DNA of 64,000 nt from Asterias rubens (Eukaryota), in contig NC_047068.1 of NCBI RefSeq assembly GCF_902459465.1, forward strand, positions 5,270,001 through 5,334,000, given 5' to 3'. The notes under the pieces are model-generated. The model did no database searches. It saw only the letters and a program-made list of their open reading frames with translations, and was not told where the DNA came from. Of this stretch, positions 29,593 through 57,415 are shown piece by piece (positions within the stretch are counted from its first letter, which is position 1; each line of letters opens with the position of its first letter). Position numbers and translations under genes: made by a program.

Positions 29593-29655
29593 TTATATTT
29601 TTAGTTTCCTCTTAGTCTTCACACCATGCGTAGCTTCAAACACCATTCAATTTAA

Positions 29656-32934: not shown

Positions 32935-33120
32935 AGTAAACTTGCGAGTACAACCATGTGTAAATCTCTTTTTCTATTGAAAAGTGTTCGCTCGGAGAGG
33001 TGCAGTTGTGGTCTCGAAGTTTGGAACAATAGTCTTTGCTTGTCTTCTGAAGACCAACATAGTAGACACCGAAACGTTGAGACCACACTGGCTCCCCTCA
33101 GAGCAAAGCAACACGCCTCC
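32935..33120. mobile_element. Fold-back hammerhead-family element, decayed, cut by a MITE
   Basis: Homologous to 29351-29592 (AAACTTGCG.GTA.AACCATGTGTAAATC). Plus strand GTCTT-CTGAAGA...GAAAC-GTT-GAGAC at 33042-33083 has an unpaired stem II. Confidence 0.65.
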
Positions 33121-34893: not shown

Positions 34894-35940
34894 TCAAATA
34901 TCCTCGTCGTATGTTGTCATGTCGTGAGGAGTATTCGGCGGGCAAATATGTCCGTACATGGATGGTTCATAACCGAGACACATCGGGCAGTCTACACTAT
35001 GCACCGTACTCATGCCGTCAGATTGAGCGCTACGCCCGCTGCCTTCACCGGGCGTGCTTCGGCTCGATTTATCTAAGATGTCCCCGGCCGTTACATCGGC
35101 ACCTGATCTGCTACGTAATTCTCGAATAATGTCTTCGGATGTATTGTAAGTCAGCTCAAAATCAAACTCATCGCTACGTGTTGAGCCACTGCGTTTGTGT
35201 TTTCTCCTCCAGGTGTCTTCAAGACTGTGATGCCGTCTGTCTCTCCAAGACGATCGGTGAAGACGATCATTCAAACGTTGGTTTCTCCTCTCAGTAGAAG
35301 TTGGTTCTTGTGGCACGGTGGTCTCTGATCTCTTGACGGCCAACCGGCGGATGATGACCCGTTCTCTAGACGAGACAGCCCCCATGTTTACTGCTCGGTG
35401 TGACCGGAAGGTATTCACGGCATCTGCAATGCTAGAGTTGATTGGTGCACCGTTTGAATAACGCATCTTTGGAACTGGTCTGGGTTCCATGGAGCTGAGT
35501 AGAGCCTGACCACGATTTGAGGTATTCCTACCAACTTTCCCAATGCGTAGAGAATCTACAAACTCTGTAGATATCTCTTTATCTTCGTCAACAGACTGTC
35601 CATTCGAAGCATCATTGGCATCTAACATCCAACGATCTCTGTGATGTGTATTCTGTGACTCAACATCCTTGTTCTTGTCCCCTTTTCTTAACGAGGAAGT
35701 TTTTGTACTAATGTCAGTTTGAAGTTCTCTGCCGGTTTGTTGTTTGCGTCCATTTTGTTTTTGTCTCACATCCACAGTTAGACCACATTCCTCCACGCGT
35801 ATCTGAGGTAAGCGTGCTGACCTCCTAGTGCACCTTAACCTCTCACTGCTAGGTTTCTCTTCTTCCGTCACTTTGTCAGAGTGGTTAGTTTTACTAGACA
35901 GAAACACTGGTGTGGTTTTGAAGTTCATACCAAAAGTCAT
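34894..35940 (-). CDS. Uncharacterised 348-aa Arg/Ser-rich protein with C-terminal HSVDCPxC...ICPPNTP motif
   Basis: 1047-nt ORF with GC above the flanks; the C-terminal motif is shared with the ORF at 50504. Confidence 0.8.
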   Translation of the reverse strand: MTFGMNFKTTPVFLSSKTNHSDKVTEEEKPSSERLRCTRRSARLPQIRVEECGLTVDVRQKQNGRKQQTGRELQTDISTKTSSLRKGDKNKDVESQNTHHRDRWMLDANDASNGQSVDEDKEISTEFVDSLRIGKVGRNTSNRGQALLSSMEPRPVPKMRYSNGAPINSSIADAVNTFRSHRAVNMGAVSSRERVIIRRLAVKRSETTVPQEPTSTERRNQRLNDRLHRSSWRDRRHHSLEDTWRRKHKRSGSTRSDEFDFELTYNTSEDIIRELRSRSGADVTAGDILDKSSRSTPGEGSGRSAQSDGMSTVHSVDCPMCLGYEPSMYGHICPPNTPHDMTTYDEDI

Positions 35941-38424
35941 GTTTTAAAAACACATCCTCGTCTTAGATATTCTGTCGACCAATATTTCTTCAAGTCTATG
36001 TTTAAATAATTATTGTCACAACATACCTGTACTTGTAATGATGAACACGATTCCTTGTTATCAAAGTCAATTTACAAGAAGATAAGAATACTTGTAATTA
36101 ATTTCAAAATCCGATGATCCACCACAGATTATAGATAAGTCATGTAAAAGCAGATAGTTTGCGATTCCGGAATCATCAAACACGAATAACTTTTGTCCCT
36201 TCAGAGAGCGACGAATCCATTCAAAGCCATATTGACTCGCATCCTAATTATTATGAAATAATTTCCTGTAATAAAAGAACGCACCTGGTTTCTTTGCACA
36301 AACTGAAAGCAAGTATAGTTCTGTCTATTACTTCTGATGTCCGGTCGTCAATTAAGATAATTGCAGTAATTGCAGAGGTGAATAAGAACATCAAAGAGGT
36401 GAAGATTGTTTGATGATGCCGCCACACCTGTTCACCTGTCCGTGGTGTTCTTGCTGTTGATTGCTGTTGCTTCAACCACAAAGATTCTCTATAGGTCTGC
36501 TTCAGCTTGCCAGACCGGTCCTGTGCGGCCCTCTTGCGGTGCAGGAACTGTCAATGTTACGACTAAAGTTAGCTATATATATTCGAGTTACACTTGGAAC
36601 AACAATGTAACTTCACCATGATGACAATATAATTTCATGACACTTGAGAAATCCGTGTGTGGATTGAAACTCTTACATAGAAATGCAGACCTCCAGCGGA
36701 TTCACCGAACAATGCGAGGCATCCAAAATGTATATGCGTCAATACAGTCATAAAAACGTAGTCATTAGAACAGTTTATTCACAACATCACGTGTGTATTG
36801 TTGTATGTCTATTATACGAACTTGGTTTATGCCTGTCACATTGAGGAGTCTGTGGAATGAATGACCAATTGACACTGTAACAGCAACAAATCACAGCTAG
36901 GAACAGAAGTTTGTTCTGGTGTCTACGCACAACAACGTACACCATTGCTATGGTGGTTACAGCATCACCTAATTCACAAAGCTTTTGTGTTCACTTCAGA
37001 GCATGAAAAACAACACAATGCAAACATGTATTGGTTTACATAGCAATTATTGCAATGTTTAATCAAGCTTAGGGAAGCTTGATATCAAATACAAGGAGAT
37101 CTTGTTTCTTGAAGAAGGTAAATAAGTCTTAAGAATATCGACAACAGAGGGGCAGTTTTCAATTAGAGAATTCCACACTCAACACCATGTGAGCCAGAGC
37201 GTGAAATGCGGTGGTATGAAGAGACTCAACCAGGCCCTATGCATTAAACCAAAACAATAGTTTCATTTTGATTATTTTCTTTTTAGAAACTTACCCTTGC
37301 TCAATACACCTCTTGTTTCAATTACCATTTAAAAACAACCTTTATCCTAAATGTTTCTTTTACCGTTTTCCATATCATACCGACTTCCATTCTATTTAGA
37401 CGCTTTCACAAAATGTATTATTTTGCACAATATCACGTAAAAATTGCAGTTAAATGAAAAAATCAAAACACAATTTAATACTTCTTTTACCTAGATTGTA
37501 TACTTTATATTAGGTAAAATCAGCACTTCACATCTGTGTATCAAAGGTGGGTAAGATCATGTCTAGCAACAATCACTTAGGACTCGGCAGACGACCCCTT
37601 GATGTTTGACTTTTTACCCACATTTTCCATCTTTGACCTTTATATACAAAGCGAAAGAAACTGATACATTCGCTTCCTCCAATTTTGCACAACCCGCCCC
37701 CCCCCCTCCCCCCACAGTGGAATCATTTCAATCGAAAGGTTCACCCTTTGTTTTCCCACGGGAAGATTAATGTCAGCAGCTTTGGTTGGATAGTACAAGC
37801 GGCATTTTAAGAAACATTTCTCTTTGAATTACTGCCATTATGGAAAAATACATCCCTTTTTATCGCAAACAATTTGAATATCTAAGATTATGTGTACATG
37901 TATTCCTTTAGGGATTAATCTTACTTCGTGGACATATTCACTCTGGTTTTTTCCGCAATACCTCAAAAACGCGACCACCTTAAAATGAAACTTTCATTGG
38001 TTCATTTTATTGTGAACAATCTCTTTTATGATAAAAACATCCAAGGGTTCAAAAAACGTATACAGACTCGTATAAGAGAAAATAAAAGTCTTTGAAATCG
38101 GTCTCCAAACAATCGCAACTAAATAAAAAACCTGCACGTGTGATAGCTCCATGGCCTGACTGATCTCATTTTACTTCAAACCAACGCCGTACAAGACATC
38201 GCTTACTATTTTCCTAGCTTTACAAATTTACTTATCGATTATTCCTTTTGACAGTTGATCTATTTGTCAATATCAAGACATGTTTTATAAGACCATCTGG
38301 TTCTTGCTCTATGGAGAAACTAAGTAAATAAAACATGGACGCTTTGCCTCAAACTAACATCACACTCTCGTGGTGGTATTTAGGGTGAGTAACGATTTCA
38401 ACAACAGATTTATTAGCACACAAT

Positions 38425-38559
38425 GGGTGCGTTCGATTAGCTTCCCCGGGTCGACCCCGGTGTGCTCATCCGGGTGGGCCCCCTGAAATGACGTCAAAGC
38501 TATTTGAACGTACCCGGGGCAGACCGGGGTCGACCCAGGGAAGATAATCGAACGCAACC
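38425..38559. mobile_element. Short PIF/Harbinger-like MITE
   Basis: TIRs GGGTGCGTTCGATTAGCTTCCCCGGGTCGACCCC and GGGGTCGACCCAGGGAAGATAATCGAACGCAACC; same TIR as 46556-46994. Confidence 0.7.
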
Positions 38560-38577
38560 TTAATTTTGGTATGTCCT

Positions 38578-38780
38578 GGATGGCGTGTGGTGGTCCAACA
38601 GTCGATATTGTTTTTCTAATCATTTGAGTGTGGGTTCGAGTCCCGGTCGTGGCACATTTGTCTTTGAGAAAGATACTTTTCCCATAACTGTTTTGCCTTC
38701 AGATTAGACATTAAGCCATAGTTCCCGTGAACTAGGGTTGGTGGTTCACACAAAACAACCAGAGCATTTATCATGGAAGA
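38578..38780 (+). mobile_element. Decayed tRNA-derived SINE
   Basis: A-box-like TGGCGTGTGGTGG and B-box GGTTCGAGTCC (38633-38643), followed by a SINE body-like GTCTTTGAGAAAGATACTT. End boundary approximate. Confidence 0.55.
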
Positions 38781-39001
38781 AGCTAGCCTGGTGTTTGTGG
38801 TTCATATCAATCACACATTGTCACATGTTTCATCACTTAAGGTATCATATCAGAAATATATAACAACACAATTCTCCCAGCTATATATGACTGGGACGAT
38901 CCAATCTGGTCAAAACCATTAATTTGTTTAGTATTGTTCTGTGTAAGTGAAGAACCTAAATGCACATAAATCGTCTCCGGCTAACGTATGTTTGTGCGTC
39001 A

Positions 39002-39353
39002 AAGGAACTGGACACCTTTGGTAATTGTCAAAGACCAGTCTTCCCACTTGGTGTATCTTAACTCAATTGGTCGTCGAAGTTGCGAAAGATGAGTGGAAGA
39101 CAAAACACCCTTGTCGCGGAAGTTGTGTGCTTTTAGATGCTTGAATTCGATTCGAGACCTCAGGTGAGGTCTCAAATTCAATTCAAAGATTTTAGTGAGA
39201 AATTACTTCTGTTTCTAAAAAAAAACTACGTTACTTCAGAGGGAGACGTTTCTCACAACGTTTTATACTATCAACAGCTCTCCCTTGCTCGTTACCAAGT
39301 AAGTTTTTATGCTAACAATTATTTTGAGTAATTACGAATAGTGTCCAGTGCCC
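39002..39353. mobile_element. Kolobok-like MITE, subfamily A
   Basis: AAGGAACTGGACAC ... GTGTCCAGTGCCC; internal homology; flanks are decayed TTAA (TCAA and TTAG). Confidence 0.75.
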
Positions 39354-40970
39354 TTAGATGACAATGAGAACTAATGATGAGCAAACAAGATTATTTTTAG
39401 TTTAGCAAACAACAAAAACACCCTCATATAAAATCGCTTCAATCATGGTTTATCAATAAACACGTGAGTGACTTTTATCCAATCATGTTGCATCACGCGA
39501 TAAGACACGCCCACTAAGACGTCACTGACTGCAAAACAACCAATGATTGTAGAGCAATTGAGTCATATTGTTCACGATGGAGGTTGCTATGAGCTGCTAC
39601 AAACCGAATCGTACTATTGATTGACGACGTTAATTTTGTTAGTTGCCGATATCACAACACGAATAATGTCCGCCACACGAATTACAGGAGGAGATATATC
39701 TGTATCATGCAAACATCTGGATCAAAACTAACTGATGTGTAGACTTGTTCCAATCCTTTCGAGTCAGGCTCTAAAACAATCGATGTAGCGCCCTCTACCG
39801 GTGATTAATACAAATACAGGGTCACCAATCAAGACGAACCATGGGGAAATGTGAGCTCGGCTCATCACGCCACAAACCGCTGTCATTGAAGATGATTAGC
39901 TTTATAGTTGATCTACACTAAGCGATGAGAAAACCATCTGCCAAGCATAAAATACAATAATGTAAACCCACAATTTATTTCTGTATCAAAGATTTGAGGC
40001 TCATGGTCTTCGGGGATTGTGGACAAACAATACATTGTGGACAAACAATACATTGTGTCATGTGGTTGTTTACTCGTAACCATGGCTATTAATTTGGGCC
40101 ACCCTTCTAATTTGCTAAGAAGCATTGGGCTCATTGTGTCATTTACTGGTTCAGGTGGTTTTCATTTTGGATGATCAAATTTGAAATTTGTCATTGTCAA
40201 CAAACACACTTGATTTTATTTCAAGAAATTGAGAGACGCTTAAATACAGTATGTAGTTTGAACATATATATCATTTTGATTGATATTTGTATGTGAAGGT
40301 AGCTTAGTTTTGGTATATCTTGACGCTTTGGTCTAGCGCTCTCAATGTATGGAATAAGCGAAGTTTCAAAATTATCCAGCAATTTGTAATGACAATTAAG
40401 CTGGTGCAGTGCGAAACCCGCTGCATTTACGCGCGTTTCTCAGCAAAAAAAACAACACGTTTTCACTCATTTTTGTCATAACTCCTTAATTTATTCCTTT
40501 ACTGTATGAATTTGTTGTTTGCAGAGCCACACACAAATCCGGGAGCTCACCCGGGATTTTTAGAGTGCAGTGCAAAGTGCCTCTCAGATATGCTATATTT
40601 AGAATCCATAGATTATTTTACTTGTGCATAACTAAATTCGGGCAAACTTGACAACATTTAGCCTTATACCATGTTTTAGAACACATATTGTAACAAAACG
40701 ACAACAACGACATCAAATGGGGCATATCAAACAAGAAAAGATGTAAATTAAAAGCATTTTATATACACGATAATGTTCAATGATTTACAGTGATTAAAAA
40801 TGATAAACATACACTGACAAAATCTTGTTGTCAATTATATTATATGGATTGATATAACTAGATGAAAGCGTAAACATATTTAAAAAGAAAATTAAGGTGC
40901 ACATTTCAATGTTGTTTCAACTAGCGATGTCACATGCAGGAACACGTGTTGGTGCCATTTCAAATTAAAA

Positions 40971-41170
40971 TTGCAACACAAAGGCGTTGCCTTCTTGATA
41001 TAGAATATGAATGCAACACAAAGGCGTTGCCTTCTTGATATAGAATATGAATGCAACACAAAGGCGTTGCCTTCTTGATATAGAATATGAATGCAACACA
41101 AAGGCGTTGCCTTCTTGATATAGAATATGAATGCAACACAAAGGCGTTGCCTTCTTGATATAGAATATGA
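40971..41170. repeat. 40-bp minisatellite, 5 copies
   Basis: Unit ATGCAACACAAAGGCGTTGCCTTCTTGATATAGAATATGA. Confidence 0.95.
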
Positions 41171-41661
41171 ACTATTTTATTTTGTTGTGATTGGTAATTA
41201 ATTTATTTGTATCCAAGTAGCTAACACTGACTAATAAATTACATCATCATGAGCTTTCGTAGCAACCACTACTTCATCAGATGCAATTAAGGGGACAGGC
41301 CATAGTTATATTATCTTTCTCAGTAATAAAAAGTAATGTTAAATGAATAAATTGCCATTCCTGTGATAAATTACAACCCTGCTTCCTTTAAAAGCATAAC
41401 ATTGTCCTTCAGCTTGCATGCATTTATTAGTCAGTCAATATGTTTTAAAGGTGGGTTTTAGGTCACTAGCTGCTATAAAAACATTTATGACATTCTTTAG
41501 TCGGACCATCAATGTACCCTTATGGACTATATATGAACATCACACAAGACAAACCTCACGTTTAAAGGGACACATTGCTTGCGGATTGGCTGCTGGGGTA
41601 TAAAAGGCGTTTTCAATAAAAATTAAAAAAATAATACGGTTGGAAAATAATTGTTTTTGTT

Positions 41662-42062
41662 AAACACACTGGTCACTATTGGTAATTGTCAAAGACTAGT
41701 CTTCACAGTTGGTGTATCTCAACATTTTATGTACAAAATGACAAACCTGTGAAAATTTGAGCTCAATCGGTCGTCAAAGTTGCGAGATATTAATGAAAGA
41801 AAAAACACCCTTGTTGCACCATGGTCACACGAAATTGTGTGCTTTCAGATGCTTGATTTCGAGACCTCAAATTCTAAATCTGAGTTCTCAAAAAATTACT
41901 TACTTGGAAAATTACTTTTTTCTCGAAAACTACATTACTTCAGAGGGAGCCGTTTCCCACAATGTTTTATACTATCAACCTCTCCCCATTACTCGTTACC
42001 AAGTAAGGTTTTATAAAAATAATAATTTTATGTAATTACCAATAGTGTCTACTGCCTTTTAA
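41662..42062. mobile_element. Kolobok-like MITE, subfamily A
   Basis: TTAA...CACTGGTCACTATTGGTAATTGTC ... TTACCAATAGTGTCTACTGCCTTTTAA. Confidence 0.75.
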
Positions 42063-42407
42063 AGATATTATCATAAAAGTATAATAATGATTCTATACAT
42101 ATAAACATTCCTTGAAATTGTGTGGATTTTGTGTAATTTCATGACAGAACAAGGTTACTCTACAAAATGGCAGACCGTGGTTCCATCAGTTGTATTTCAA
42201 GAGGCAAAGTTTTGGTTTTATTTTATCACCGCTCACTACTGTGTATGGACAAGTATTGAGAAAGACCAAGAGTAACACGCAGCAACAATTTGAAAGGTGA
42301 AGGCAACATACCAATTAAACTTAAACTCGGCTGAACAACAGTTCCATTTACACCACATAATAATCTCAATGTCTTAACTTACACAATTACATTCCATGTA
42401 AATGACG

Positions 42408-43688
42408 CTAAGATGCGTACAAGCTCTTCACTCTATGAATCAAACTATCCATCTGCATTCTAAGATTTAAAGTTTCAAAATCTTCCAAGTCATCCAAACT
42501 GTCTGCCTCACTGACAGGTGGAGTCAAACTCCCCTGAAACGACAACCGATTCCAATTATAAACCGAGTTAATAGCAGCCAGATTCATATGTGGATGAGAT
42601 GGTTCGACAGTCCGACTTTGCTTTAACTTGGTAATGTTCATCAGTGTATACTTGGGGCAGTAAGCTGGTGGGTGCCGGCTGGACTCGAACCGGCGGTCTG
42701 CCGGTATGACGGGCCAAGGGTTCACGGGACGATCTGTGCCGTGGTCAAAGCTGGTGAATGGGGATGGCAGCTGTCTTTGGACGGGGTGTGTGTGCTGGAG
42801 ATGACGGGTGCATAGTCGTTTCGTTTCGTGTTGTTTGGTTGACCAGCAATTATTCTTTCTTTTGACGAAGAAAGGACGCGGTACATGAAGCGTCTGAGCG
42901 AACTCAATGCGAGTGTTCTTGGCCGTGTATGCGTTCGAATCCCAGGTACCGTCACCAGCAATGCGTATGGAATCAGAATTGTTGGTAGAGGTGGAAGGAA
43001 GTAAGGAGTTCTTGCTACCAAATTCCGTTTGCTTCGTATGTTCCCTATTCACAAGACGTTTTATTTTCTCTGATGGTTTATGGAAACTAATCGGCTCACG
43101 GTGTTTATTCGATTTGTCCTTAGCAACAGGCTTAAAAAGTATGTCCACCCTCGTCACATGTTGGTGTGAGCAGTTGCCATGACTACCTTCCTGCCCTCTG
43201 TTGAGCTCTCTGTCCACTCCATAGCTAGAGGAGGATTTTAAAGTCAAAGTTGAATCACCATTACTCCTTTCTACAGCTTGGGGAATACTTATAGAATACC
43301 TGTCCCTTTTCTCCACAGTTTTCCCATTCACATATCCCTGGAATGAAACACTAGTCCGCCTGCTTGATGGATCTCGGTTACTTGACTCAGATTGGTTATC
43401 AGGGAAAATGATTTTCACAGTTGTAGCTTCCGTGCCGTTCTTTTTCCTCCTTCTGCCCATCTCAAACGAAAGAGCCTTATCCGTCTTGAAGCTTTCCCTT
43501 CTATCCATGGAAACTCTCCTGTGTCTCTCTCCTCCCTCAGGTTTCTTTATTCTTGGATGTTTCTCTGTTGCATCTATGATTGGTAGAGGAGTCACAGGTT
43601 TCCTTGATACCACCAGTAGGTTCTTATCAGCACTGCACGGTAGTCGTAACTGCTGGCTCGTACCAAGCCGTGAATACAACGTCTCCAT
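42408..43688 (-). CDS. Uncharacterised 426-aa basic, probably disordered protein, single coding exon
   Basis: 1281-nt ORF. Minus-strand acceptor TCTGTTTTAG| lies 17 nt upstream of the ATG. The C-terminus has LTPPVS and an acidic/amphipathic tail. No known domain recognised. Confidence 0.8.
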   Translation of the reverse strand: METLYSRLGTSQQLRLPCSADKNLLVVSRKPVTPLPIIDATEKHPRIKKPEGGERHRRVSMDRRESFKTDKALSFEMGRRRKKNGTEATTVKIIFPDNQSESSNRDPSSRRTSVSFQGYVNGKTVEKRDRYSISIPQAVERSNGDSTLTLKSSSSYGVDRELNRGQEGSHGNCSHQHVTRVDILFKPVAKDKSNKHREPISFHKPSEKIKRLVNREHTKQTEFGSKNSLLPSTSTNNSDSIRIAGDGTWDSNAYTAKNTRIEFAQTLHVPRPFFVKRKNNCWSTKQHETKRLCTRHLQHTHPVQRQLPSPFTSFDHGTDRPVNPWPVIPADRRFESSRHPPAYCPKYTLMNITKLKQSRTVEPSHPHMNLAAINSVYNWNRLSFQGSLTPPVSEADSLDDLEDFETLNLRMQMDSLIHRVKSLYAS

Positions 43689-46555
43689 CTTAGAACTATC
43701 TCAGCCTAAAACAGAGTCCAGTTATTCAGTCAGCAAACTTCAAATCTCATTCTGACAATGAGCCTCTGGAGATGATAGTCTGGTTGCGATGGTGGCCATC
43801 CCTCAAAGTGACAGATGTAATAGAGTTTGACGGCATTATAATCCAATGCTGCAAGGTACTCTATTTTCGACCCAACCGTAAAAGGTCTGCACCCGTGGCT
43901 AAATGTCTGACAATAGACCTGGAGAGAGAGCCCGGTAATCATGAAAATAAACTTTTACATTCCGAAGAAAATTGAGAACAGTTTGCCACAATGTTGTCAT
44001 CGTGTCCATAACACTTTTGCTTTGTCTGTTTCATAAAGGTTGAACCGAAGTGATAGAGTTGGAGTAGATCGCCATTGGGCCCCTTCATTTGGTGTCGAAT
44101 TCAATTTGTGTAGTGGTGTTCATCCTTAGATCACCACATCAAGCATCATTGTGGTAGGTTGGTTAAGACAACTCCAGTCTTGTCAGTTATCTTCAAAACA
44201 CATCACTGATATGTGTTATTACAGACATGAACAACCTCCACTTCACCCGTCCAAACAGAAATCCCAAAGAACAATTAATATTCAAGCTTTTCAACCTTTA
44301 TTCCCAACAGCAGCGAGTGACAATCACTGTATTATCTACAGCGCTAATTGAGTTCTATTATCACGAGAAGGGTGGCCAAAGGTTGTATGGGTTTACCCTT
44401 CCGGCCTAGGGTGACCGTTGTGCGGAGCTATTGTCCCGGTCTTCTCCTTGCCGACGCCTCGGTGGCATCCCCTTATCCTAGCCATGAAGACGTTCACTGG
44501 GTGTTGAATCAGCAATCCAGTCACTAATGGGACAAATGCCCTTAAAACTACCGGATATGAAGGGATGTAAACACGGTGTATAAACCAGCACTTCTGGCAT
44601 CGCTCTTACCCGATATTTACCAAGTGCCATTAGCTATGGGTTGTCGGGGCGACAGATGATGAGTTGTTATTTAGAGTCATAAACATGCACGTATAACGGT
44701 GTTTATCATACCAAAGACCTCCCCGTTAATAGCCCATATAGCCCATATAGCCCATCGTTTTCTAGTTGCTAAAACACCCCATTGTTCAATGTAGGCAATG
44801 TTTTCCATTAATTTTTGAAGTCAGGAAAAGAGTAAAAACCGCTATTGACCCTCCTTCACGGTGTTCAAATAAAAAAATAAAAAAAACATAATTTAATACA
44901 GAATAAACTAATATTAGGAATATTATTCTAATATCTGTACCAATAATCACATTAAAGTGAGATTTAACATCAATGTATTAAAACATTTAATTCAGTAGAT
45001 TTTGGTGTGTTCCGTTTTTAGTTTGCACGGTATTCTTGTCATTTCATTTTAATCTGGTTGCAAAGTAAAGGACCTTCAAAAGCAAACTCAATGAAACCAA
45101 TGGATGTATAGAGAGATGTAGGGATGTACAAGGACGTTCCTATATAGAGGCAGATTGCCCAAAATGCGTCAATATACACCTTATGACGTCACAAGCCAGT
45201 AAGAATTAAGACCATTTGTAATTGCATGACTTAATTGTATATATTCATCAGTAAAACTTCAATATAAACAAAACCGACCACAAACAATATCACAACTGTT
45301 GGACCAATAGGCATTTAATGAGAAGTCACTGAATGTCAGTCAAGATTAGACGTCTCCACAGTGAGACGTCTTGTTTTGCCTCCCTGTTCATCTTTACTCT
45401 GATTCCCACTTAACTTATATACCGTAAAACTCGGTAATCTTCTTTACTGCTGAATGTGATATCGGATTATTCCTCTTTAGGGAGGATAAGGGAGGATGAA
45501 TTCTGGTGGCCAGAGTTAAGACTTCAATAGACGTAACAGGTCTCAATGGTTAACCAGCACCGAGACGGGACCCGTACCCAGTGGTACCATGAAGGAAGGG
45601 TAGGGAGGTACTTAAACCTTCCTCAAATCTAATAAATCACAGTGCAGCCCAATTTCTGTGTATCATTTTGCAAAAGGTATTACTGGTTTTCCTCAGCACA
45701 ACAGCATCCTACAGATTTATGGGTTTTTTTTATGTCATACAATATACACAAATTTATTAATAGGTTCTACAAGAGCACTATACCAATGTTTCCGATTAGC
45801 AGATGGATAGCAACTACGTTTTAATATCAATTTACATCAAATTGATGAGGCTTGAAGAGCTTAGACTTTGCACTCGGTAAAACCACGCGCTAGATTGTGA
45901 GCCATTGCGATTTGATGATTAGATTTTAATTGTTTGCAATGATATTAATATCCCCTTTAATTTCAGAATTAAAATGGGCTACATTCGTACCTTCAAATCT
46001 CTCAATTGTTTGCCGTTTGGAATTGTTCCTTATCTTTTTAAAAGGTTGTTTCTGCACAAAATAATCATAAATTTGCGTCTTGAAATACGCCCATCGGTGG
46101 AGCATGGTCCACCATAGAGTCAACAAATAGCGGACTTAATATGTCATGAAATAAAAATATAAACACAGTTTCAAGGGACATTATGAACATCATCATAATT
46201 ATTCTAGTGTTAAATTAATATTTACTTCAAAGCAAACTGGTTTTTTTGTGCACAAAGCAACCGATCCAAATACAACATGTCTTTAAAAAGGTACAATTTT
46301 CACGATTTAACAAGCATGAACACGAAAGAAGAACCATCCATTGGTGAACAATTTTAAAATAACAAACTTTATCCTGGTTAGTATAAATTTGTCTGTGCGT
46401 TCATCCATGTTTTATCCAGAGTTTTTTTGAATTATTTTACGCATTCTACAATCACGTATCTCTGCTGCAACATTAAACTCACGAGTCAAGACTCCAAGCA
46501 TCCAATGAGGACAGAGTGGGGCCAGGGGAGGGGAGGTGTTACCACGCTACATATT

Positions 46556-46994
46556 GGGTGCATTCGATTAGCTTCCCTGGGTCGACCCCGATGTGCCGTA
46601 TTTTATTTTTTTCCATGACGAAATGGGCACACAGTTACCCCACGTTCGTCCTCGAACCAGGAACAAAACCAGGACACGTCACCACGTGAGCCTTCCCGTG
46701 GTGACGTCAGTGCACCTCGGGCCAGCCCCAAGAGCCCCACTTGGGGATAGGGTCACTTGGGGCTGACCCGAGGTGCGCTGACGTCACGACGAGAAGGCTC
46801 ACGTGATGATGCGTCTGGTTTTTTTCCAGGTGGAGCGTGGGTAAACATTTGCATACGTTCGTACTGGAAAGGGAAAACAAAATAGGCGACTTTTCCAGGA
46901 CGAACGTGGGGTAATTGTATGCATACATTCGTCCTGGAAAAAAATAAAATACGCAACATCGGGGTCGACCCAGGGAAGCTAAACGAACGCACCC
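46556..46994. mobile_element. PIF/Harbinger-like MITE
   Basis: TIRs of about 35 bp, GGGTGCATTCGATTAGCTTCCCTGGGTCGACCCCG and CGGGGTCGACCCAGGGAAGCTAAACGAACGCACCC, with 3-bp ATT on both sides and internal inverted subrepeats. Confidence 0.75.
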
Positions 46995-47417
46995 ATTATC
47001 GAACATCGAATGGCGGTCACATGCTCATAATAATTGTTTCTTTGTCAAACCCAAAATTAAATAAAAAGTGGCAATTAAAGGTGCATCCTGGTTAAAACGT
47101 ACTGTCTATACCAACGAGATGTCAATCTTTTTTGTATTGAAGTTTTCTTTGCTCTAATCATACACACAAACTACTTCTCCCCCTTTCTCATATTACAGAT
47201 GCCATTTTCATTTGCCAACACGCAACTTTATTACAATACGCTGCATGCGCAAGTACGGAGCTCAAGAAGTGCCATATCACTTAAAACGATAATCTACAAC
47301 TTATTGTATTATGTACATGTATTGCTGTGGCGTTCTTATGATAACTTGTCTTGCTATTTTATTATACTATTTTATTATACCACAGACCGAGTAGATTTTT
47401 CGGAATTCGGGAGACTT

Positions 47418-47690
47418 AAAGGTGTCTAGACACCACGTTCCAGACACTGCACACTACTGGTACTCCAAATAAGTGTTAGCATTAAAACTTAACTCGGTAA
47501 CGAGCAATGGAGAGCTTTTGTTGTTATAAAACCATGAAAAACGGTAAGTTAAGTACACCATTTTGTGAAACAAGTGGGGTTTTTCTTTCCCTTTTTATTC
47601 TCTCGCAATTTTGATTTGTTATCGTACGCAAAATGTTGGGATACACCAAGTGAGAATACTGATCTTTTTTCCAAACCTGTCCAGTACCTA
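47418..47690. mobile_element. Degenerate Kolobok-like MITE
   Basis: TTAAAGGTGTC...ACTCGGTAACGAGCAATGGAGAGCT...GATACACCAAGTGAGAATACTG homology. Confidence 0.6.
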
Positions 47691-50503
47691 TAAGAAGTAA
47701 TCCAAAACCGTATTATGGTCTTGATAAAGTGGTATGCCGTACTACAGTCCGTAATGCAAGTCATGTTGAAGGCTAGACTTGGTGAGCTGTGTATACCAGC
47801 GGAACTCTACCTTTCTTGTTGTCTGGGGACCAATTCTTCTACTGACTTAGGAATTCATTACTTGTTAGGTCGTCCGTGTTGTCTCAAGGCTTCTGTGTCT
47901 CATCATTCATTCATTCATTCATTCATTTCTTTATTCAATACTCCACCTAGTGGTACAAACTTTGTCAAACCTTATTATCTCTCTGCCAAACTAATTTCTC
48001 GCTGGATAACGCAGCAAAGAAATTTCTTAAAACCAATTTCAATGAGGCAACCTTGTTCTCTGGAGCGTTTCCTGTAACCAAGGTGATAAAGAGCCTTCTT
48101 GAGTTTTCAATTCTTGGGATCCTGGCTCTCTGGTACACCTTTCACAAGTCGGCGCCTGTGGTCTCTCTTGGCGATTGCCTTGCTTACGTATCGTAATCAA
48201 GGGGACGATATTGTCCGCTTTTTGTCCAATGGTGATGAAAATGCCCGATTTAAATTCCTATTGTGACTTTGTGCACTCAAGGGGGCCGGTCTATCGATAC
48301 CGCGGGACCATCGCGGACCCACAAGCAGCCACAAGCCAAGAATCCAAACAATCGATTTTCTGTTTTTCTTTTCTTTAGAAAATTGGCAGAACAACTAGCT
48401 ATTGAAGGCTACATAGAAGAGTTTACGGTGCGCTACGCTAGCAACAACAACCTGTATCTACCAGGCGTGGACTGCTCGTTTTAACACCTTCATTAACAGC
48501 ATGAAAACGATCTGATCTGCTGACGAGTTTCTGAAGTTTCTTTTACATTTAGGACCAAACCAGCTTACCATGGAGGAATTAAACAGCGTGTCTAGTGAGT
48601 TTTAAGGTTCGTATCAAACAGAAGTTTGATATTTGCGAAGTTGTTGAAGGACAAACTTAACCAGGCAGAATGCCTTTAAACTGCTTGGTGTTATGTTGCA
48701 CTACTAGTGCTTTTTAATTATTAATGAACTTCCGAGGCTCAACGATGGCATCTACTCGTTAGTACTAGAGCTCCACATCAGCCACTTATGGCTGTGAACA
48801 TTCAGCGCTATACAGGTGTTGTTGAGAGTAAATCACCAGGGAAACGCCGTCATATGTTCCTGTTTTGGTCATTTCCCATCGACTAGAGAATCCATTAGAC
48901 TCCTCATCAAGTAATGACACGAGGAGCTATACCAGATGATAAAGAAGATGAAATGTAATGAGAAAGAAGGAGAGAATATTGATGTCTTAGGACTTTGGTT
49001 TGATCCAAATGGTCATCATTCATCATCTACCCCTCAGCCATCGAGGACCTGACCGGGTGAATATGTCTGCTGTGACGCTTCAAATTCACCCTCCCTGCAT
49101 CGAGAAACAGGTGCGTTCAATTGATTTTCATTTCCACTTTTTTCCTAATATTATGATATGTTGAGGGGCCTACATGGAGAGTCGAACGCTTTATATAGGA
49201 TATGACTTATTTATTTTTAGAATTTCCTTTTCATTTAATTTGTGTAAAACGTCGCCAAACAAATTGTTTACAAAAGAAGGGTGATATAAATCAATAATTT
49301 GTTCCGAGACAGAACAGCGACATGTATGTACTATAAAACCATCTCGTAGTTTTGCATTACATTGGCATTATACGCTTTAACTTCTTTACGAAGATTCGAA
49401 TTGTCGATGGGAACGTCTTGAATGATATAAAGATTCACGAGGAGAGGGACATGGCATGAACCATGGAAAGGAAAGCTGGCATGACGTTAACAAAGCAAAC
49501 AACAACAACATCAACAACGACAACAATATTGCAACGTCATTTCACTACATTAACCCCTCCTTTGTACTTGTAAAAAAAAAGCGAATCGACAAACCATTAA
49601 TTATCCATTTATCTACATGGATCGTTCATAATGAAAAAATTGGCACCAGGATTCTAACATTCATATTATAAAAATTGCAGGCTGGCATACGCATGAAACC
49701 TATGTTGATGCTTTTAAATGTTGATTTGGGGGGTTTTGTACAATTTCGGACAATAAAAAAAAGACATACCAAATTTTAAAGATCGATGTATGATGTTGTC
49801 ATCTTTCTCAATTTCAAATGATTTAAGCGGAACTTTGCTTTGCCCGCGAAGTTTATGGTTTGGTACCAATTTCTTTTACCAAGTTGGAATTGTCACACTC
49901 TAAAATATGATAGTCAAAACAACACTGATTAGTCATATGAGACATGATTTTGATGTAAGGGAAATCTAAAATATGTGTCATGCGACTAATTAGTGTCAGT
50001 TGTTTTGACTAATGTATTTTTAGAGTGCACGATCATTCAGGAGAGCCTTAATGATGTTTGGGGTTTTGTTTTAACTCTTCCGTCGGCTCAAGATGAAACG
50101 AAGTCCTTTGAAATATGAACCCGTTATGAATGGACAGGGTCGAGGTTGTTAAGCTCTCGATGAATATTAGGTTTCCAATCTTTATTGCGCGTGATTGAAT
50201 ATCAACTGCAAACTCTTAATTAATTCTTTCTAGCCATTGATTAAGCTTTTCATTGGTCAATAATAAACCAAGCGAAAACTTCTTAGAAATGCAACAGATA
50301 AAGTCCTCTCTCCAATAGACAGGGATGTATTGTTTGAAATGAATCCACGTTAGCTGTGCGATGACAGATCAGTCTAAGGGCTTTCTCTTGAGTCAAATAG
50401 TTTGATAAGTCAAATATAATATTATTTTCTCTTGTGAATTTGCAGATGTGACAACCACCGTGATTTCGTCGACATCAAGACACCGAGAAGCAACCTCTTC
50501 AAG

Positions 50504-51844
50504 ATGCCAGTGAAGCTCCTTGCAACCAACCCTTTCACTGAACCAGCCCGCCTGGAATATGAACCGTCACCCTCACCAGCAACGCGCACCTATCGCTGGA
50601 AAAGACCCCTCGGAGTTCTACCCCAGCATCTAAGACCGAGTAACAACCAAACCCGAGGGGGACTCGTGTTGGCTGGACGGTCAAACAATCAGGCCAGGTT
50701 ATCAGATGCCAGACAGTTGTACAGCATGACACAGGTCGCTACTGAGCATCTCAAATCAGCTTCGCAGCAAGGTTTTCGGGAGGAGACTAAGAGTTGTGAT
50801 TTAGACTCTTACAGACTTGGAACTCCATCGTATGGTGTCAATAATAACAATCACACAAATCAAAAGAGCAGTAGTAGCAAAACACAGTTGCCAAATATTA
50901 AACCAGATGAAGGTTCAAGACATGGCTTTGAGTACAGAGTCGGTAGACAAACATACAGTAGGACCGAAGTATTGTTGAAACTTCAGCGGAGACGGAAACA
51001 CGTTGGACGGCAAGGTGGAGCAGACAGTACCGGTGTAGCTGATGGGAGACTTAGTAAAGATTTACCCGGTATCAATATGAGAGAATCACCTCCCGACTCA
51101 CGTGAAGCCAGCTCCATCACTAGACTGACGAACAATTCATCAGATTCTGGGTGTTACAGTAGGGAATCTACAGGTGCAAAGAGTCGAAGCCCGCCCTCTA
51201 AAGGTAGAAAAGTCGACTGTTCCTTGATATCCAAAGTAGGTCAAACTATTGACTCTAGTGTGAGTGAGGTTTCCCTATACAGCTCAACTGATATACAACA
51301 TGAATCCAATCGACATAAAGCTCGTATAGGATTCGTTGAGGTGGCTACCCCACTCAATCGAGACAAGGATGATGTAGAGATTCTAGAGGATCGATCAGCC
51401 AGCACATCCAGCCCTGTAGTGTCGAACGATGTCGACAGTGTTTGTGAAGAGCTGCAGAAGATTGTCCTGCAACGTTCAACACCTCAGAACCTCATCTGCG
51501 ATACTGCATGTGCTACACACTACCGTGAGGAGAACAACCTCTCACAAGCCTCACACATCTCAGATAAAGATCGGTTGGTGAGGGCTATGCAAGCTCTTCA
51601 ACCTCCCGTACCTCACGTCGTGTGGCCAGAGAACAAATACTACACCCCTCATACTGTGTTTGTTTACGGCAGTCCGTCCCGGTTGGCACCGATGGTCATA
51701 CCGTCTCATAGCGTCGATTGCCCGCAGTGCAAGCTGTACCAAGCATCCTCATACGGGGACATTTGTCCACCTAACAGTCCAACTCCCTGGATGCAAAAAG
51801 AATACGGGTTTTATCCAGTGGAGAGACACTTTTTATCTAAATGA
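50504..51844 (+). CDS. Uncharacterised 446-aa Ser/Arg-rich protein with C-terminal HSVDCPxC...ICPPNSP motif
   Basis: 1341-nt ORF. Strong acceptor TTTTCTCTTGTGAATTTGCAG| at 50445 starts the exon. Motif shared with the ORF at 34894. Confidence 0.85.
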   Translation: MPVKLLATNPFTEPARLEYEPSPSPATRTYRWKRPLGVLPQHLRPSNNQTRGGLVLAGRSNNQARLSDARQLYSMTQVATEHLKSASQQGFREETKSCDLDSYRLGTPSYGVNNNNHTNQKSSSSKTQLPNIKPDEGSRHGFEYRVGRQTYSRTEVLLKLQRRRKHVGRQGGADSTGVADGRLSKDLPGINMRESPPDSREASSITRLTNNSSDSGCYSRESTGAKSRSPPSKGRKVDCSLISKVGQTIDSSVSEVSLYSSTDIQHESNRHKARIGFVEVATPLNRDKDDVEILEDRSASTSSPVVSNDVDSVCEELQKIVLQRSTPQNLICDTACATHYREENNLSQASHISDKDRLVRAMQALQPPVPHVVWPENKYYTPHTVFVYGSPSRLAPMVIPSHSVDCPQCKLYQASSYGDICPPNSPTPWMQKEYGFYPVERHFLSK

Positions 51845-52014
51845 ACTATTTTAGAAGAGACTTGACGGGAAATGAAGCAATACAACTACACCCTGATAAG
51901 TCATTGTGCCTTCAATTCAGTATAAATATTATTCCTTCATTTGTTTGTATTTATTCTACTATTAAACCATTTTAATGTTCATGTTTTGCCATCGGATACG
52001 AAAAACCTGCTCAA

Positions 52015-52379
52015 AGCCATTGGACCCTTTCGGTAAACACTATTGTCCAAGGCCCACACTTCGTGTATCACAACTTCTATATCAAATAACAAACCTGTGA
52101 AAGTTTAGGCTCAATCGGTCATCGGAGTCTGGAAAAAATAACGGGAAAACCCACCCGTGTATCCGCGCGTTTCGCCGTGTCATGACATGTGTTTAAAATA
52201 AATCCGTAATTCTCGCTAACGAGAATCGATATTGTTTTACTGTTTTCTCAAAAGGTAAAGCATTTCATGGAATAATATTTCAAGGGAAAACTTTCACCAC
52301 TACCTTCTGTAAACCCTGTAAGTTATTTGTAAATCTGTGAACTTTTTTTTTCTTTCTGTACCGAAAGGGTCCAATAGCT
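52015..52379. mobile_element. Kolobok-like MITE, subfamily B (inverted relative to 301-675)
   Basis: AGCCATTGGACCCTTTCGG ... CCGAAAGGGTCCAATAGCT|TTAA. Confidence 0.8.
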
Positions 52380-53400
52380 TTAACGGGCTAAACTTATACA
52401 TTGTAGTTTAAAAACGTGTTAATAACGCACGTTTTGAAACTACAAATAACGGTTATTAAAGTGTTTATGGTCGGAGTTAATGAAGACAGTAGAGTAGAAA
52501 TATATAAATCAGAACTGTTGGTCAAATTTACTATTACATACAATTCTTGCCCTGACAATTATTTTGTTGATCAGGCTGAAGCCCGGTTTATTACTTCTTG
52601 CAAATGCGTATGCGAAGCAAATTTTGACGTCACATCCTTTGCGGGAAATGTTTCGCAGGGGTTGATCACGACTCAACTGTTGCAAATTAATTTGTGGCGT
52701 CAACATTCGTATTATATTCGCAGGAAATATGAACCGGCGGGCTTTAATAGTCGGCCAATGTTATAGAGATCGGCCAACATTCAATGGAATGTCATACATG
52801 TTTTATGAAACTGTCGACATATCACACACAAAGATGTGGTTGTCGGCCGTCGTTTGTAATGCTGCATAATTAATCAAAAACACAAACGTGTACATTTATA
52901 GATGTTCATACAGACACTCCGTAGAGTTAGTTTAGATTTTCACCGTTGTTTGCATTTTATTGTACGGAAGGAAGGAATGGCCTACGTCTTTTACGCCCAC
53001 TACTATCAGGATTTGTATTATAACTATAGCCCCGCCCCCGCTCCTCGTTATTTAGAATATCATGTAACCGCATCCAATGATAGATCACTTAACCAAAATG
53101 CATATCTAAAATGTTATAAGGGTTTTCAATTCTAAAAGTTTTAACCAACATGTTGTTATTCCGCCTATAGCGAGATGTACAATTTTAATTTTGGTACCTT
53201 ATACAATGCAAGAATCCCGGACAAAAAGTCAACCGATATTCACTGATCCGTGGAGAGTATGAACATCCATTTTGAACAAACTTTATTTGGTTTTTTTCTG
53301 CTGTTGCAAGCTGCTCACCAAAAAGGGTATCGAAACGCAAAACACAAGTTTATGGCCGTCTTTTCGGCTGTTCAAAACGGCACGCCACAAGCGGGTGATG

Positions 53401-56323: not shown

Positions 56324-57415
56324 ATGGCGCCTTCAAATGCACCACACATCTACCTATCTCCTCCAACAGAATTTTCTTCCGAGACAGTCCGAAAATACAT
56401 GAGCCTGAACAGAAGTACCTCTCGGACATCATGTATTACCGATACAAAAAGCTGCCCCGAGATCAGCAGCGGGTCACGGTGCCCTTCACCGCCGTCTAGT
56501 GACAGCGATCGACCCGTAAAGACACGGAGGAAGTCTGCCTGGACTCGCTCTTACACGGACCTCAGCGGAGATATGATAAGGGTACCCTATGGACAAAGTA
56601 GCAAGATGCAAAGGGTGTTGATGACCGGGAATGTCGCTGCCCAGAAACGTCTTGATATGGAGCTCAAGAAGCTATCCGTGGCAAAGCTTAAGAGGGAGGA
56701 GGAACTGACTTTGGAGAAATTAGATTTCATCGAGTCGGCATTCAAGAAGAGTGTTGCCATCGCAAAGGGACTTCAGAGGGACTATGACGCGATAGAACGC
56801 GTGGCATCTCGACACCGTGAAGTGGATCATCTACCACGAATATCAACAGCAAGATGTAGTTTGGTATCACGTTATTCACCTCACAGCTCGGTTGCATCTG
56901 CCGTTCAGACCACCACCAAGAAGCTTCAAGAACCCGGTGCAGATCATGAAGAGTCACAATCAGTGGTAAAGTTCCCAGTCATAACCACCGAGACACCCGG
57001 CATTGCAAACCAGTCTCCTGAACGGGGCTTCGTTCTATGCCAGAACAGGCGACTCTTGAAACAGGGCGAGACTATGCATGACCTGATTGAACATAACATG
57101 ATAAGCACTATCAAGCATGTTGGAATCCATCTTAATGTAGATGAACCTAACACCCCAAGGCAGCCTAAAGTCTTAGATGAGAATCCCATTGAGGCAAAGA
57201 GTTCTTCTTGTGACGATGAGAGATTCACCCGTCTCCAGGGTTCCTTAGTCCCGATGTGGGAGACAACAAGCTGGAACGAACGTCTCCAAAGAGAGAAAGA
57301 TGAAAGAGTGCTCCTTGGGATTGTGACGCCATCAAAGCCTACTAAAGACAATAAGATACGACTTGCTAGTAGCAAACGGGACACATTTGGAGTTCATAGG
57401 GACTCATTTTATTAA
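56324..57415 (+). CDS. Uncharacterised 363-aa protein with Ser-rich N-terminus and a probable central coiled coil
   Basis: 1092-nt ORF with good start context ATCATGG. AAQKRLDMELKKLSVAKLKREEELTLEKLDFIESAFKK is heptad-like and charged. Confidence 0.8.
   Translation: MAPSNAPHIYLSPPTEFSSETVRKYMSLNRSTSRTSCITDTKSCPEISSGSRCPSPPSSDSDRPVKTRRKSAWTRSYTDLSGDMIRVPYGQSSKMQRVLMTGNVAAQKRLDMELKKLSVAKLKREEELTLEKLDFIESAFKKSVAIAKGLQRDYDAIERVASRHREVDHLPRISTARCSLVSRYSPHSSVASAVQTTTKKLQEPGADHEESQSVVKFPVITTETPGIANQSPERGFVLCQNRRLLKQGETMHDLIEHNMISTIKHVGIHLNVDEPNTPRQPKVLDENPIEAKSSSCDDERFTRLQGSLVPMWETTSWNERLQREKDERVLLGIVTPSKPTKDNKIRLASSKRDTFGVHRDSFY

What the first reader, a model, noticed from the sequence alone, without database searches (positions are those of the whole stretch)
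34894..51844. Unrecognised protein family defined by a C-terminal Cys motif, HSVDCPxCxxYxxSxYGxICPPN[TS]P
Seen: the 348-aa ORF ends HSVDCPMCLGYEPSMYGHICPPNTP (34927-35001, minus) and the 446-aa ORF ends HSVDCPQCKLYQASSYGDICPPNSP (51707-51781). That is 17 of 25 positions identical, while the rest of the two proteins shows no similarity by eye. The 648-aa ORF has the motif in two parts: CSMCPMC (28445-28465) and a terminal DCPPNTP (CPPNTP at 29258-29275). Inference: a small module with H, CxxC and a distal C (possible Zn knuckle) plus a proline-directed phosphosite, kept under selection on fast-evolving disordered scaffolds. I do not recognise it as a named domain.
Basis: partly seen in the sequence, partly recalled or inferred. 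Interest (0 to 1): 0.8.

Follow-up and report, generated by a model that had tools for sequence, protein, structure and literature searches.

The report
Echinoderm disordered-protein family with Cys-Pro tail
Three neighbouring starfish genes for floppy, unstructured proteins share a short cysteine- and proline-rich tail motif. The motif has been kept across sea stars, sea urchins and sea cucumbers, matches no named protein domain, and looks more like a docking and phosphorylation tag than a self-folding zinc knuckle.

Summary
The 25-residue motif lies at the stated coordinates in the 348-aa ORF (B) and the 446-aa ORF (A), with 17/25 residues identical (pairwise E 8e-10; profile-profile E 2.5e-12). 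The hexapeptide CPPN[ST]P occurs three times in the six-frame translation, where 0.0035 is expected, each time at the C-terminus of a long ORF.

The window is Asterias DNA.
- A has orthologues in asteroids, echinoids and holothuroids, with an ~85-aa conserved C-terminus.
- B and C (the 648-aa ORF) have orthologues in other asteroids, and B also in one further genome.
- Gene order and orientation (E, A, D, B, C) are the same in Acanthaster.
- A is transcribed and spliced, with a 5'UTR intron.

There was no Pfam or PDB match. An exhaustive profile search of 1.84 billion proteins found 12 real members. Every member with a source name is echinoderm; several carry no name.

The zinc-knuckle reading is doubtful:
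- The second Cys of CxxC is Ser in all three holothuroid-type sequences.
- Type C keeps only DCPPN[ST]P at its end.
- Residues that could not bind zinc are as invariant as those that could.
- AlphaFold2 gives no confident fold (pLDDT 42-45).

My best reading (0.45) is a bipartite docking motif carrying a P-x-[ST]-P phospho-acceptor. The family is real and undescribed, and its function is unknown. Interest is moderate.

The parts
50504..51844 (+). Gene A coding sequence (446 aa, single coding exon). Orthologues occur in asteroids, echinoids and holothuroids.
   Evidence: Start codon confirmed: in-frame stops lie upstream in the spliced mRNA.
49111..50445 (+). GT..AG intron in the 5'UTR of gene A. 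The upstream non-coding exon ends at 49110 and the coding exon begins at 50446.
   Evidence: contigs of runs X4 (2230 nt, depth 125) and X1 (1664 nt, depth 24) skip this stretch and continue through the ORF to about 52042. Junction letters were checked.
51587..51841 (+). Conserved ~85-aa C-terminal region of type A (residues 362-446), running from VPHVIWP through TVFVYGSPS and the Cys motif to YGFYPVER.
   Evidence: column identity is 0.64-0.66 here against 0.08-0.33 over most of the protein. 31 of the alignment's 36 invariant columns fall in this region.
51707..51781 (+). 25-aa Cys-Pro motif of gene A (HSVDCPQC...GDICPPNSP).
34894..35940 (-). Gene B coding sequence (348 aa). Orthologues in Asterias amurensis, Patiria, Acanthaster, an ENA asteroid-like contig and GCA_039555335.1.
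   Evidence: The RNA runs that carry the spliced A transcript also hold B.
34927..35001 (-). 25-aa Cys-Pro motif of gene B (HSVDCPMC...GHICPPNTP).
27341..29287 (+). Gene C coding sequence (648 aa). Orthologues in A. amurensis, Patiria, Acanthaster and an ENA contig.
28445..28465 (+). CSMCPMC in gene C. S-M-C-P-M-C-R is invariant in all orthologues. It may be a detached first half of the motif.
   Evidence: local identity block 0.72 against 0.38-0.44 in the flanks.
29219..29275 (+). C-terminal HIPTA ... DCPPNTP of gene C. H-I-P-T-A and D-C-P-P-N-x-P are invariant in orthologues.
42408..43688 (-). Gene D (426 aa). An interleaved disordered-protein gene without the motif. It lies upstream of B both in asteroids and in GCA_039555335.1.
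   Evidence: The AYCPKY seen in Asterias is not conserved in orthologues.
56324..57415 (+). Gene E (363 aa). The downstream neighbour of A, without the motif. The EPNTP seen in Asterias is not conserved in Acanthaster.
   Evidence: A weak E-like ORF lies downstream of A in Apostichopus.

Best explanation
A, B and, less securely, C are paralogous genes in an old, collinear echinoderm gene cluster. Each has a single coding exon. They encode basic, hydrophilic, intrinsically disordered proteins whose only shared element is a C-terminal bipartite linear motif: H-S-[VL]-D-C-P-x-[CS], about 8 variable residues, then G-x-x-C-P-P-N-[ST]-P. In type C the motif is reduced to D-C-P-P-N-[ST]-P. I read it as a docking peptide that recruits one common folded partner to different disordered scaffolds. 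The invariant P-x-[ST]-P would be a proline-directed (MAPK-type) phospho-acceptor that switches the interaction. The cysteines would then contribute contacts, or a partner-shared metal, and not an autonomous zinc fold. Shown here: conservation, disorder prediction, synteny and transcription. Inferred: docking, phosphorylation and the existence of a partner.
For: Amino-acid-level selection:
- Invariant H, D, C, P, G, C, P, P, N and P show saturated synonymous variation across eight genes.
- A and B profiles align with 97.7% probability, E 2.5e-12, over 32 columns and nowhere else.

The conservation pattern fits a linear motif:
- Residues that cannot bind metal (S, D, P, G, P, P, N, P) are as invariant as H and C, in contiguous runs, while the putative ligand C2 varies.
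- Type C retains only the fused core DCPPN[ST]P at its extreme C-terminus, invariant in 5 sequences.

Disorder:
- AlphaFold2 mean pLDDT is 44.6 for the 85-aa A C-terminus and 41.9 for full-length B.
- All cluster proteins have GRAVY -0.7 to -1.1, pI 9-10, and 65-70% disorder-promoting residues.

Other points:
- P-N-[ST]-P is present in every member. P-x-[ST]-P is the textbook ERK/MAPK minimal consensus (own knowledge).
- The genes are real: a spliced transcript exists in two run sets, and the order E-A-D-B-C with the same orientations is kept in Acanthaster.
Against: - No partner, phosphorylation or binding was tested.
- His plus three Cys with fixed spacing (H-x3-C-x2-C-x11-C) is kept in most members, and CPxC is the classic zinc-knuckle turn.
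- Three members give sub-threshold hits to a treble-clef Zn-finger model (best E 0.031).
- The AlphaFold2 alignments were shallow (14 and 5 sequences), so the low pLDDT is weak evidence against a fold.
- In type A the motif sits in an 85-aa conserved block, and AF2 weakly pairs two flanking strands (residues 23-28 with 74-79 of the model, pLDDT about 50-54). That could be a small domain.
Confidence: 0.45

Rival explanations
1. It is an autonomous small zinc-binding module (an HCCC knuckle, the first reader's idea). His and the CPxC turn plus the distal Cys would chelate one Zn(II) and fold the C-terminus into a compact knob.
For: The H-x3(4)-C-x2-C-x11-C spacing is kept in A of asteroids, echinoids and the P0004 group, in all B, and in P0025. 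CPxC is a zinc-knuckle hallmark (own knowledge). There are sub-threshold hits to zf-Tbcl_FmdE in 3 of 14 members. Spare ligands exist: invariant H371 in A and invariant His in GH[IV]CPP in B. The loss of one Cys is therefore not fatal to this reading.
Against: C2 is Ser in Apostichopus (AGC codon) and in two related sequences, with the rest of the motif intact. Type C has one Cys at the terminal site, and its CPMC lies about 265 residues upstream. Non-ligand residues are equally invariant. AF2 gives no confident fold. No Pfam or PDB zinc-finger match reaches threshold.
Confidence: 0.3
2. The cysteines are sites of chemistry and not of structure. They could be S-palmitoylated for membrane anchoring, act as a redox-sensitive or Cu(I)-binding switch, or form a metal bridge shared with a partner protein, as in the CD4-Lck zinc clasp or the FNIP1-FEM1B cysteine degron.
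For: The proteins lack signal peptides and folds but keep Cys next to Pro. B adds Met and a second His (H, C, M, C, H, C). C has C-S-M-C-P-M-C, which is a soft-metal ligand set. The analogies are from memory only.
Against: Nothing here tests lipidation, redox or copper. Met is not conserved in type A. This is compatible with the docking reading and is not fully distinct from it.
Confidence: 0.12
3. Only A and B form a family. The 648-aa protein C shares CPPN[ST]P and CPMC by convergence or chance, so the 'three-member family' is overstated.
For: hhalign of A against C aligns 11 columns, probability 17%. B against C aligns 8 columns, probability 4%. The exhaustive profile search did not recover C-type proteins.
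Against: The expected count of CPPN[ST]P in the five ORFs is 1e-4. It sits at the C-terminus as in A and B. It is invariant in C orthologues. C is the immediate neighbour of B in three asteroid genomes. C also shares a VP-x-x-IW motif with A.
Confidence: 0.2
4. The ORFs are not functional genes, for example decaying repeats or mis-called ORFs, and the motif has no function.
For: There is no known domain. The sequences are low in complexity. Two large RNA runs show almost no reads on ORF A.
Against: Orthologues with intact ORFs occur across three echinoderm classes. The motif shows synonymous-only variation. A spliced transcript exists at depth 125. Synteny is conserved.
Confidence: 0.02

Closest known systems
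CPxC zinc knuckles, zinc ribbons and treble-clef fingers (e.g. Pfam PF23475 zf-Tbcl_FmdE)
   Same: There is a C-P-x-C turn preceded by His and followed by a distal Cys. Three family members give weak sub-threshold hits.
   Different: The second half-site has a single Cys inside C-P-P-N-[ST]-P instead of a second CxxC or HxxC. C2 is Ser in holothuroids. Type C lacks the knuckle at its tail. No model reaches its Pfam cut-off, and no confident fold is predicted.
Proline-directed phospho-acceptor motifs (MAPK P-x-[ST]-P; CDK [ST]-P-x-[KR])
   Same: P-N-[ST]-P is invariant in every member and lies in a disordered tail.
   Different: The surrounding invariant residues (C-P-P-N, H-S-V-D-C-P) go far beyond a kinase consensus. 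There is no basic residue at +3 for CDK. Phosphorylation was not tested.
Intermolecular cysteine-metal clasps (CD4/CD8-Lck zinc clasp; FNIP1 Cys degron bound by FEM1B)
   Same: Short Cys-containing peptides in disordered tails could need a partner to complete a metal site. That would explain conserved Cys without an autonomous fold.
   Different: The analogy is from memory only. There is no sequence similarity and nothing was tested here.
Vertebrate single-coding-exon disordered proteins with short conserved boxes (MACIR/UNC119_bdg PF15435, INKA/FAM212, C3orf70)
   Same: These are the top language-model feature neighbours of the A C-terminus (score 0.65-0.71). They have a similar architecture: a disordered protein with a small conserved box.
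   Different: The scores are below the tool's chance level (0.8). There was no Pfam hit at E<=10 and no hit in the exhaustive profile search. The family is not a member of any of them.

Membership tests
Zinc knuckle / small Zn finger | Four metal ligands (Cys/His) invariant in all members | tested here: not met
   C2 of CPxC is Ser in P0006, P0011 and P0021, with an AGC codon in Apostichopus. The type C tail has one Cys. Spare His residues could compensate, so metal binding as such is not excluded.
Zinc knuckle / small Zn finger | Match to a curated Zn-finger model above threshold | tested here: not met
   The best match is PF23475, E 0.031, in 3 of 14 members and below its cut-off. PDB profile search: nothing.
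Zinc knuckle / small Zn finger | Compact fold predicted or observed | tested here: inconclusive
   AF2 pLDDT was 44.6 and 41.9 with no confident structure at the motif. The alignments had only 14 and 5 sequences, and no metal was modelled.
Zinc knuckle / small Zn finger | Stoichiometric Zn(II) binding | not testable with these tools
   Needs peptide biochemistry.
Short linear docking motif (SLiM) in a disordered region | Lies in intrinsically disordered sequence | tested here: met
   Low pLDDT throughout. Composition: GRAVY -0.7 to -1.1 and 65-70% disorder-promoting residues.
Short linear docking motif (SLiM) in a disordered region | Short contiguous residues conserved while the flanks diverge, across orthologues and paralogues | tested here: met
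Short linear docking motif (SLiM) in a disordered region | A defined folded binding partner | not testable with these tools
   No interaction data are available.
MAPK-type phospho-acceptor (P-x-[ST]-P) | Consensus present and conserved | tested here: met
   P-N-S-P or P-N-T-P is present in all A, B, C, P0025 and P0026 sequences.
MAPK-type phospho-acceptor (P-x-[ST]-P) | Phosphorylated in vivo or in vitro | not testable with these tools
   No phosphoproteome was accessible.
Pfam DUF4722 (PF15849) | Score above the gathering cut-off, shared by family members | tested here: not met
   Only P0025 matches, at 13.6 bits against a cut-off of 27, E 0.057. None of the other scanned members match.
MACIR / UNC119_bdg (PF15435) | Pfam model match | tested here: not met
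   The only link is an atlas feature score of 0.71. There was no hmmscan hit at E<=10.

The most novel reading that the evidence does not exclude
The Cys-Pro tail is an echinoderm-specific regulatory tag, either a metal- or redox-assisted docking peptide or a degron, gated by MAPK-type phosphorylation. It would place a whole syntenic cluster of disordered proteins under one control system. That system might act in gametes, embryos or larvae, because expression is sample-restricted and fragments of gene A appear in two marine metatranscriptomes.
Probability: 0.15. Interest if true: 0.6.

Novelty: new variant of a known kind. Interest (0 to 1): 0.42.

Why it matters
The motif has been conserved since the echinoderm classes split (about 450-500 million years ago by my own knowledge). 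It sits on proteins that otherwise evolve almost beyond recognition, which implies a specific and still unknown binding or modification event. The family has no domain annotation, no structure and no literature.

The motif is short enough for immediate peptide experiments: Zn binding, kinase assays and pull-downs. Sea stars and urchins are tractable oocyte and embryo systems in which MAPK and CDK signalling is well studied.

The locus is also a clean example of an old, collinear cluster of lineage-restricted disordered-protein genes. Identifying the partner would annotate several 'uncharacterized LOC' genes in every echinoderm genome.

Tried and rejected
- **Pfam.** No family matched any of the five cluster ORFs or eight relatives, nor the 14 C-terminal pieces. 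The DUF4722 lead (P0025, E 0.057) was not shared by any other member and is rejected as chance. DUF1642 (gene D) and IPP-2 (gene E) are weak and below their cut-offs.
- **PDB sequence profile search.** Only one chance hit, E 1.5.
- **ESM Atlas feature search.** Tried twice. The best score was 0.71 (MACIR), below the tool's own chance level.
- **Fold search.** Not run, because both AF2 models were of low confidence and would give meaningless matches.
- **Literature.** Searches for the motif string, DUF4722/PF15849, the assembly accession and six gene or protein accessions all returned zero papers.
- **D and E as degenerate motif carriers.** AYCPKY in D and EPNTP in E are not conserved in orthologues, so this is rejected.
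- **Recent gene conversion between A and B.** Rejected, because 11 of 17 identical residues use different codons.
- **Rfam at gathering thresholds on 26000-60000.** No family was found.
- **Taxon of several sequences.** I could not identify the source of the ENA and Logan sequences P0004, P0010, P0022 and P0025, nor of GCA_039555335.1. From memory I believe that assembly is a brittle star, but this is unverified.
Full report
**1. Observation**

The ORF listing finds the 648-aa ORF (27341-29287, +; here C), the 348-aa ORF (34894-35940, -; B) and the 446-aa ORF (50504-51844, +; A). Two more long ORFs are interleaved with them: D (42408-43688, -) and E (56324-57415, +).

- HSVDCP...CPPNTP at 34927-35001 (-).
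- HSVDCP...CPPNSP at 51707-51781 (+).
- CPPNTP at 29258-29275.
- CSMCPMC corresponds to residues 369-375 of C, that is 28445-28465.

The statistics support the observation:
- BLASTP of B against A gives 17/25 identical, E 8e-10, and nothing else of note.
- CPPN[ST]P is expected 0.0035 times in the whole six-frame translation and 1e-4 times in the five ORFs. It is seen three times, always near a C-terminus.

**2. What the genes are**

The window is sea-star DNA. B and C are 99% and 97% identical to Asterias amurensis proteins, and A's own sequence is in the database. Earlier notes of this scan call the genome Asterias rubens.

*Type A*
- A has full-length orthologues in Acanthaster and Patiria (56-58% identity).
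- It has C-terminal matches in Diadema, Lytechinus, Strongylocentrotus and Apostichopus, and in several unnamed ENA and Logan sequences.
- The A alignment is almost unalignable over most of its length (column identity 0.08-0.33). Its last ~85 residues are strongly conserved (0.64-0.66) and hold 31 of the 36 invariant columns.
- So in type A the 25-mer sits inside a longer conserved tail: VPHVIWP, then TVFVYGSPS, then the motif, then YGFYPVER.

*Type B*
- B is conserved along most of its length among asteroids (52-64% identity).
- A 31%-identical relative, P0026, lies in assembly GCA_039555335.1 and keeps HNLDCPLC...GHVCPPNTP.

*Type C*
- C has asteroid orthologues only.
- In them S-M-C-P-M-C-R, H-I-P-T-A and D-C-P-P-N-x-P are invariant.

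*Reach of the family*
- An exhaustive hmmsearch with the C-terminal profile (A3) against 1.84 billion cluster representatives found 14 hits at E<=1e-3. Two were obvious repeat artefacts.
- The 12 real hits are type A, type B and one divergent 548-aa protein, P0025, whose motif is HTNVDCPYC...TTCPPNTP.
- No hit carries a non-echinoderm source name. Several have no name at all.
- Pfam, a PDB profile search and the literature are blank.

**3. Are the three types one family?**

Profile-profile comparison of A and B gives 97.7% probability, E 2.5e-12, over 32 columns. That link is solid.

A against C aligns only 11 columns (E 1.4e-3, probability 17%), and B against C only 8. On sequence statistics alone C is therefore not proven. 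Four things favour common descent:
- the tiny chance expectation of the hexapeptide;
- its C-terminal position;
- its invariance in C orthologues;
- C's position next to B in three asteroid genomes.

The C tail reads as if the 15 residues between the two 'CP' of the A/B motif had been deleted (HSVD-CP...-CPPNSP becoming D-CPPNTP). This is inference.

D and E do not carry the motif. Their look-alike bits (AYCPKY, EPNTP) are not conserved in orthologues.

**4. Locus organisation**

In Acanthaster (one scaffold, loci L001 and L005) the order and orientation are E(-) A(-) D(+) B(+) C(-), followed by a further ~363-aa gene X(+). In the opposite reading direction this is exactly the Asterias order C(+) B(-) D(-) A(+) E(+).

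Other genomes keep parts of this arrangement:
- Patiria keeps D(+) B(+) C(-) X(+).
- X is not in the window.
- In GCA_039555335.1 a D-like ORF lies upstream of the B-like gene, as in asteroids.
- In Apostichopus a short ORF downstream of A weakly resembles E (E 0.006).
- In Lytechinus and Diadema the gene downstream of A is a different disordered protein. It contains CECPNCRDKKATQE, reminiscent of C's CSMCPMCRAQAATKE. This is suggestive only.

**5. Expression and gene structure**

Contigs of two run sets were laid on 48900-53400. X4 gave a 2230-nt contig at depth 125 with 3 mismatches. X1 gave a 1664-nt contig at depth 24 and about 2% divergence, so probably a sister species. Both contigs skip 49111-50445 with GT..AG ends and then run through the whole ORF A to about 52042.

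- The intron lies in the 5'UTR. Upstream in-frame stops leave the ATG at 50504 as the start.
- Intron sequence is covered only at depth 2-6 in X4.
- Two deep raw RNA runs (X9, X10) have almost no reads on the ORF, so expression is restricted by sample.
- Two marine metatranscriptomes hold 7-10% of A's words.
- B is held at 0.71-0.77 by the same runs X1 and X4-X6. This is consistent with co-expression but does not prove it.

**6. Selection**

Codon alignment of the motif from eight genes shows free synonymous change at the invariant residues (CAC/CAT, GAC/GAT, TGC/TGT, all four CCN, AAC/AAT). Within Asterias, 11 of the 17 residues shared by A and B use different codons. This is long-term purifying selection on the peptide. 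It is neither DNA-level conservation nor recent gene conversion.

**7. Zinc knuckle or linear motif?**

For a metal site:
- H-x3-C-x2-C-x11-C is kept in most members.
- CPxC is a knuckle hallmark (own knowledge).
- Three members give sub-threshold hits to a treble-clef finger model.
- Spare His residues exist: H371 in A, and GH[IV]C in B.

Against an autonomous knuckle:
- The second Cys is Ser in Apostichopus (codon AGC, one base from TGC) and in two related sequences, while every other motif residue is kept.
- The type C tail has one Cys, and its CPMC lies ~265 residues away.
- Non-ligand residues S, D, P, G, P, P, N and P are as invariant as H and C, in contiguous runs, which is the signature of a peptide read by a partner.
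- AlphaFold2 gives mean pLDDT 44.6 for the 85-aa A tail (14 sequences) and 41.9 for full-length B (5 sequences), with about 50 at the motif. The shallow alignments make this weak evidence.

All five cluster proteins are basic, hydrophilic and rich in disorder-promoting residues.

P-N-[ST]-P is invariant and fits the P-x-[ST]-P MAPK consensus better than the CDK consensus, because no basic residue stands at +3 (own knowledge).

**8. Verdict**

This is a real, expressed, undescribed protein family. It is echinoderm-restricted as far as detectable. It is defined by a bipartite Cys-Pro C-terminal motif on disordered scaffolds and embedded in an old collinear gene cluster.

| Reading | Confidence |
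|---|---|
| Docking peptide with a proline-directed phospho-switch | 0.45 |
| Autonomous Zn knuckle | 0.30 |
| Cysteine chemistry (lipidation, redox, partner-shared metal) | 0.12 |

None of the three can be decided without peptide biochemistry. Interest is moderate: nothing like a new mechanism has been shown, but this is a cleanly defined, testable, deeply conserved motif with no annotation.

Noticed in passing
window 740-3536, 11368-14530, 15534-15926: Three arrays of one 63-bp satellite (98% matches; 44, 50 and 6 copies) cause the strong GC skew. They also create spurious 931-aa and 1060-aa ORFs on the minus strand. The arrays bracket a region whose ORF 8040-9701 looks by eye like the endonuclease part of a non-LTR retrotransposon.
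   Followed up: partly
window 51920-52520: A repeat directly 3' of gene A has enormous RNA coverage: word depth up to about 9e5 in X4, and 230-450 reads per strand in X9 and X10. Many 'opposite strands' joints (52034/52035 with 52350-52355) indicate a transcribed fold-back element. Gene A's transcript contig ends at its edge (about 52042).
   Followed up: no
window 26000-60000: Rfam at gathering thresholds finds no family here. First-stage notes nevertheless propose hammerhead ribozyme motifs at 29351-33120 and 59183-59226.
   Followed up: partly
L006 19086-20174 (Patiria); L005 from 20877 (Acanthaster): A sixth cluster gene, X (~362 aa), lies beyond C. It carries DPPPNSPPP, like CPPNSPTP but with Pro in place of Cys, and IPLRIWEP. 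No counterpart exists in the Asterias window.
   Followed up: partly
A residues ~369-375 (window ~51608-51628); C residues ~581-588 (window ~29081-29104): A second shared short motif, [VI]P-x-x-[IS]W, appears in several cluster proteins: VPHVIWP in A, VPLLIWKK in C, IPLRIWEP in X, and IPIFSWRP in the urchin gene downstream of A. It hints that more than the Cys motif unites them. I did not test this statistically.
   Followed up: no
L002 15379-18895 (Lytechinus); L008 16833-19419 (Diadema): The urchin gene downstream of the A orthologue is a disordered protein with CECPNCRDKKATQE, resembling C's CSMCPMCRAQAATKE. It ends in ...SDCAACVAGVSC. Similarity to C-type is weak (E 0.002 in a small database).
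   Followed up: partly
L007 16226-16729 (Apostichopus): A short ORF downstream of the sea-cucumber A orthologue weakly matches the coiled-coil-like part of gene E (27% over 55 aa, E 0.006). The A-E adjacency may therefore predate the asteroid-holothuroid split.
   Followed up: no
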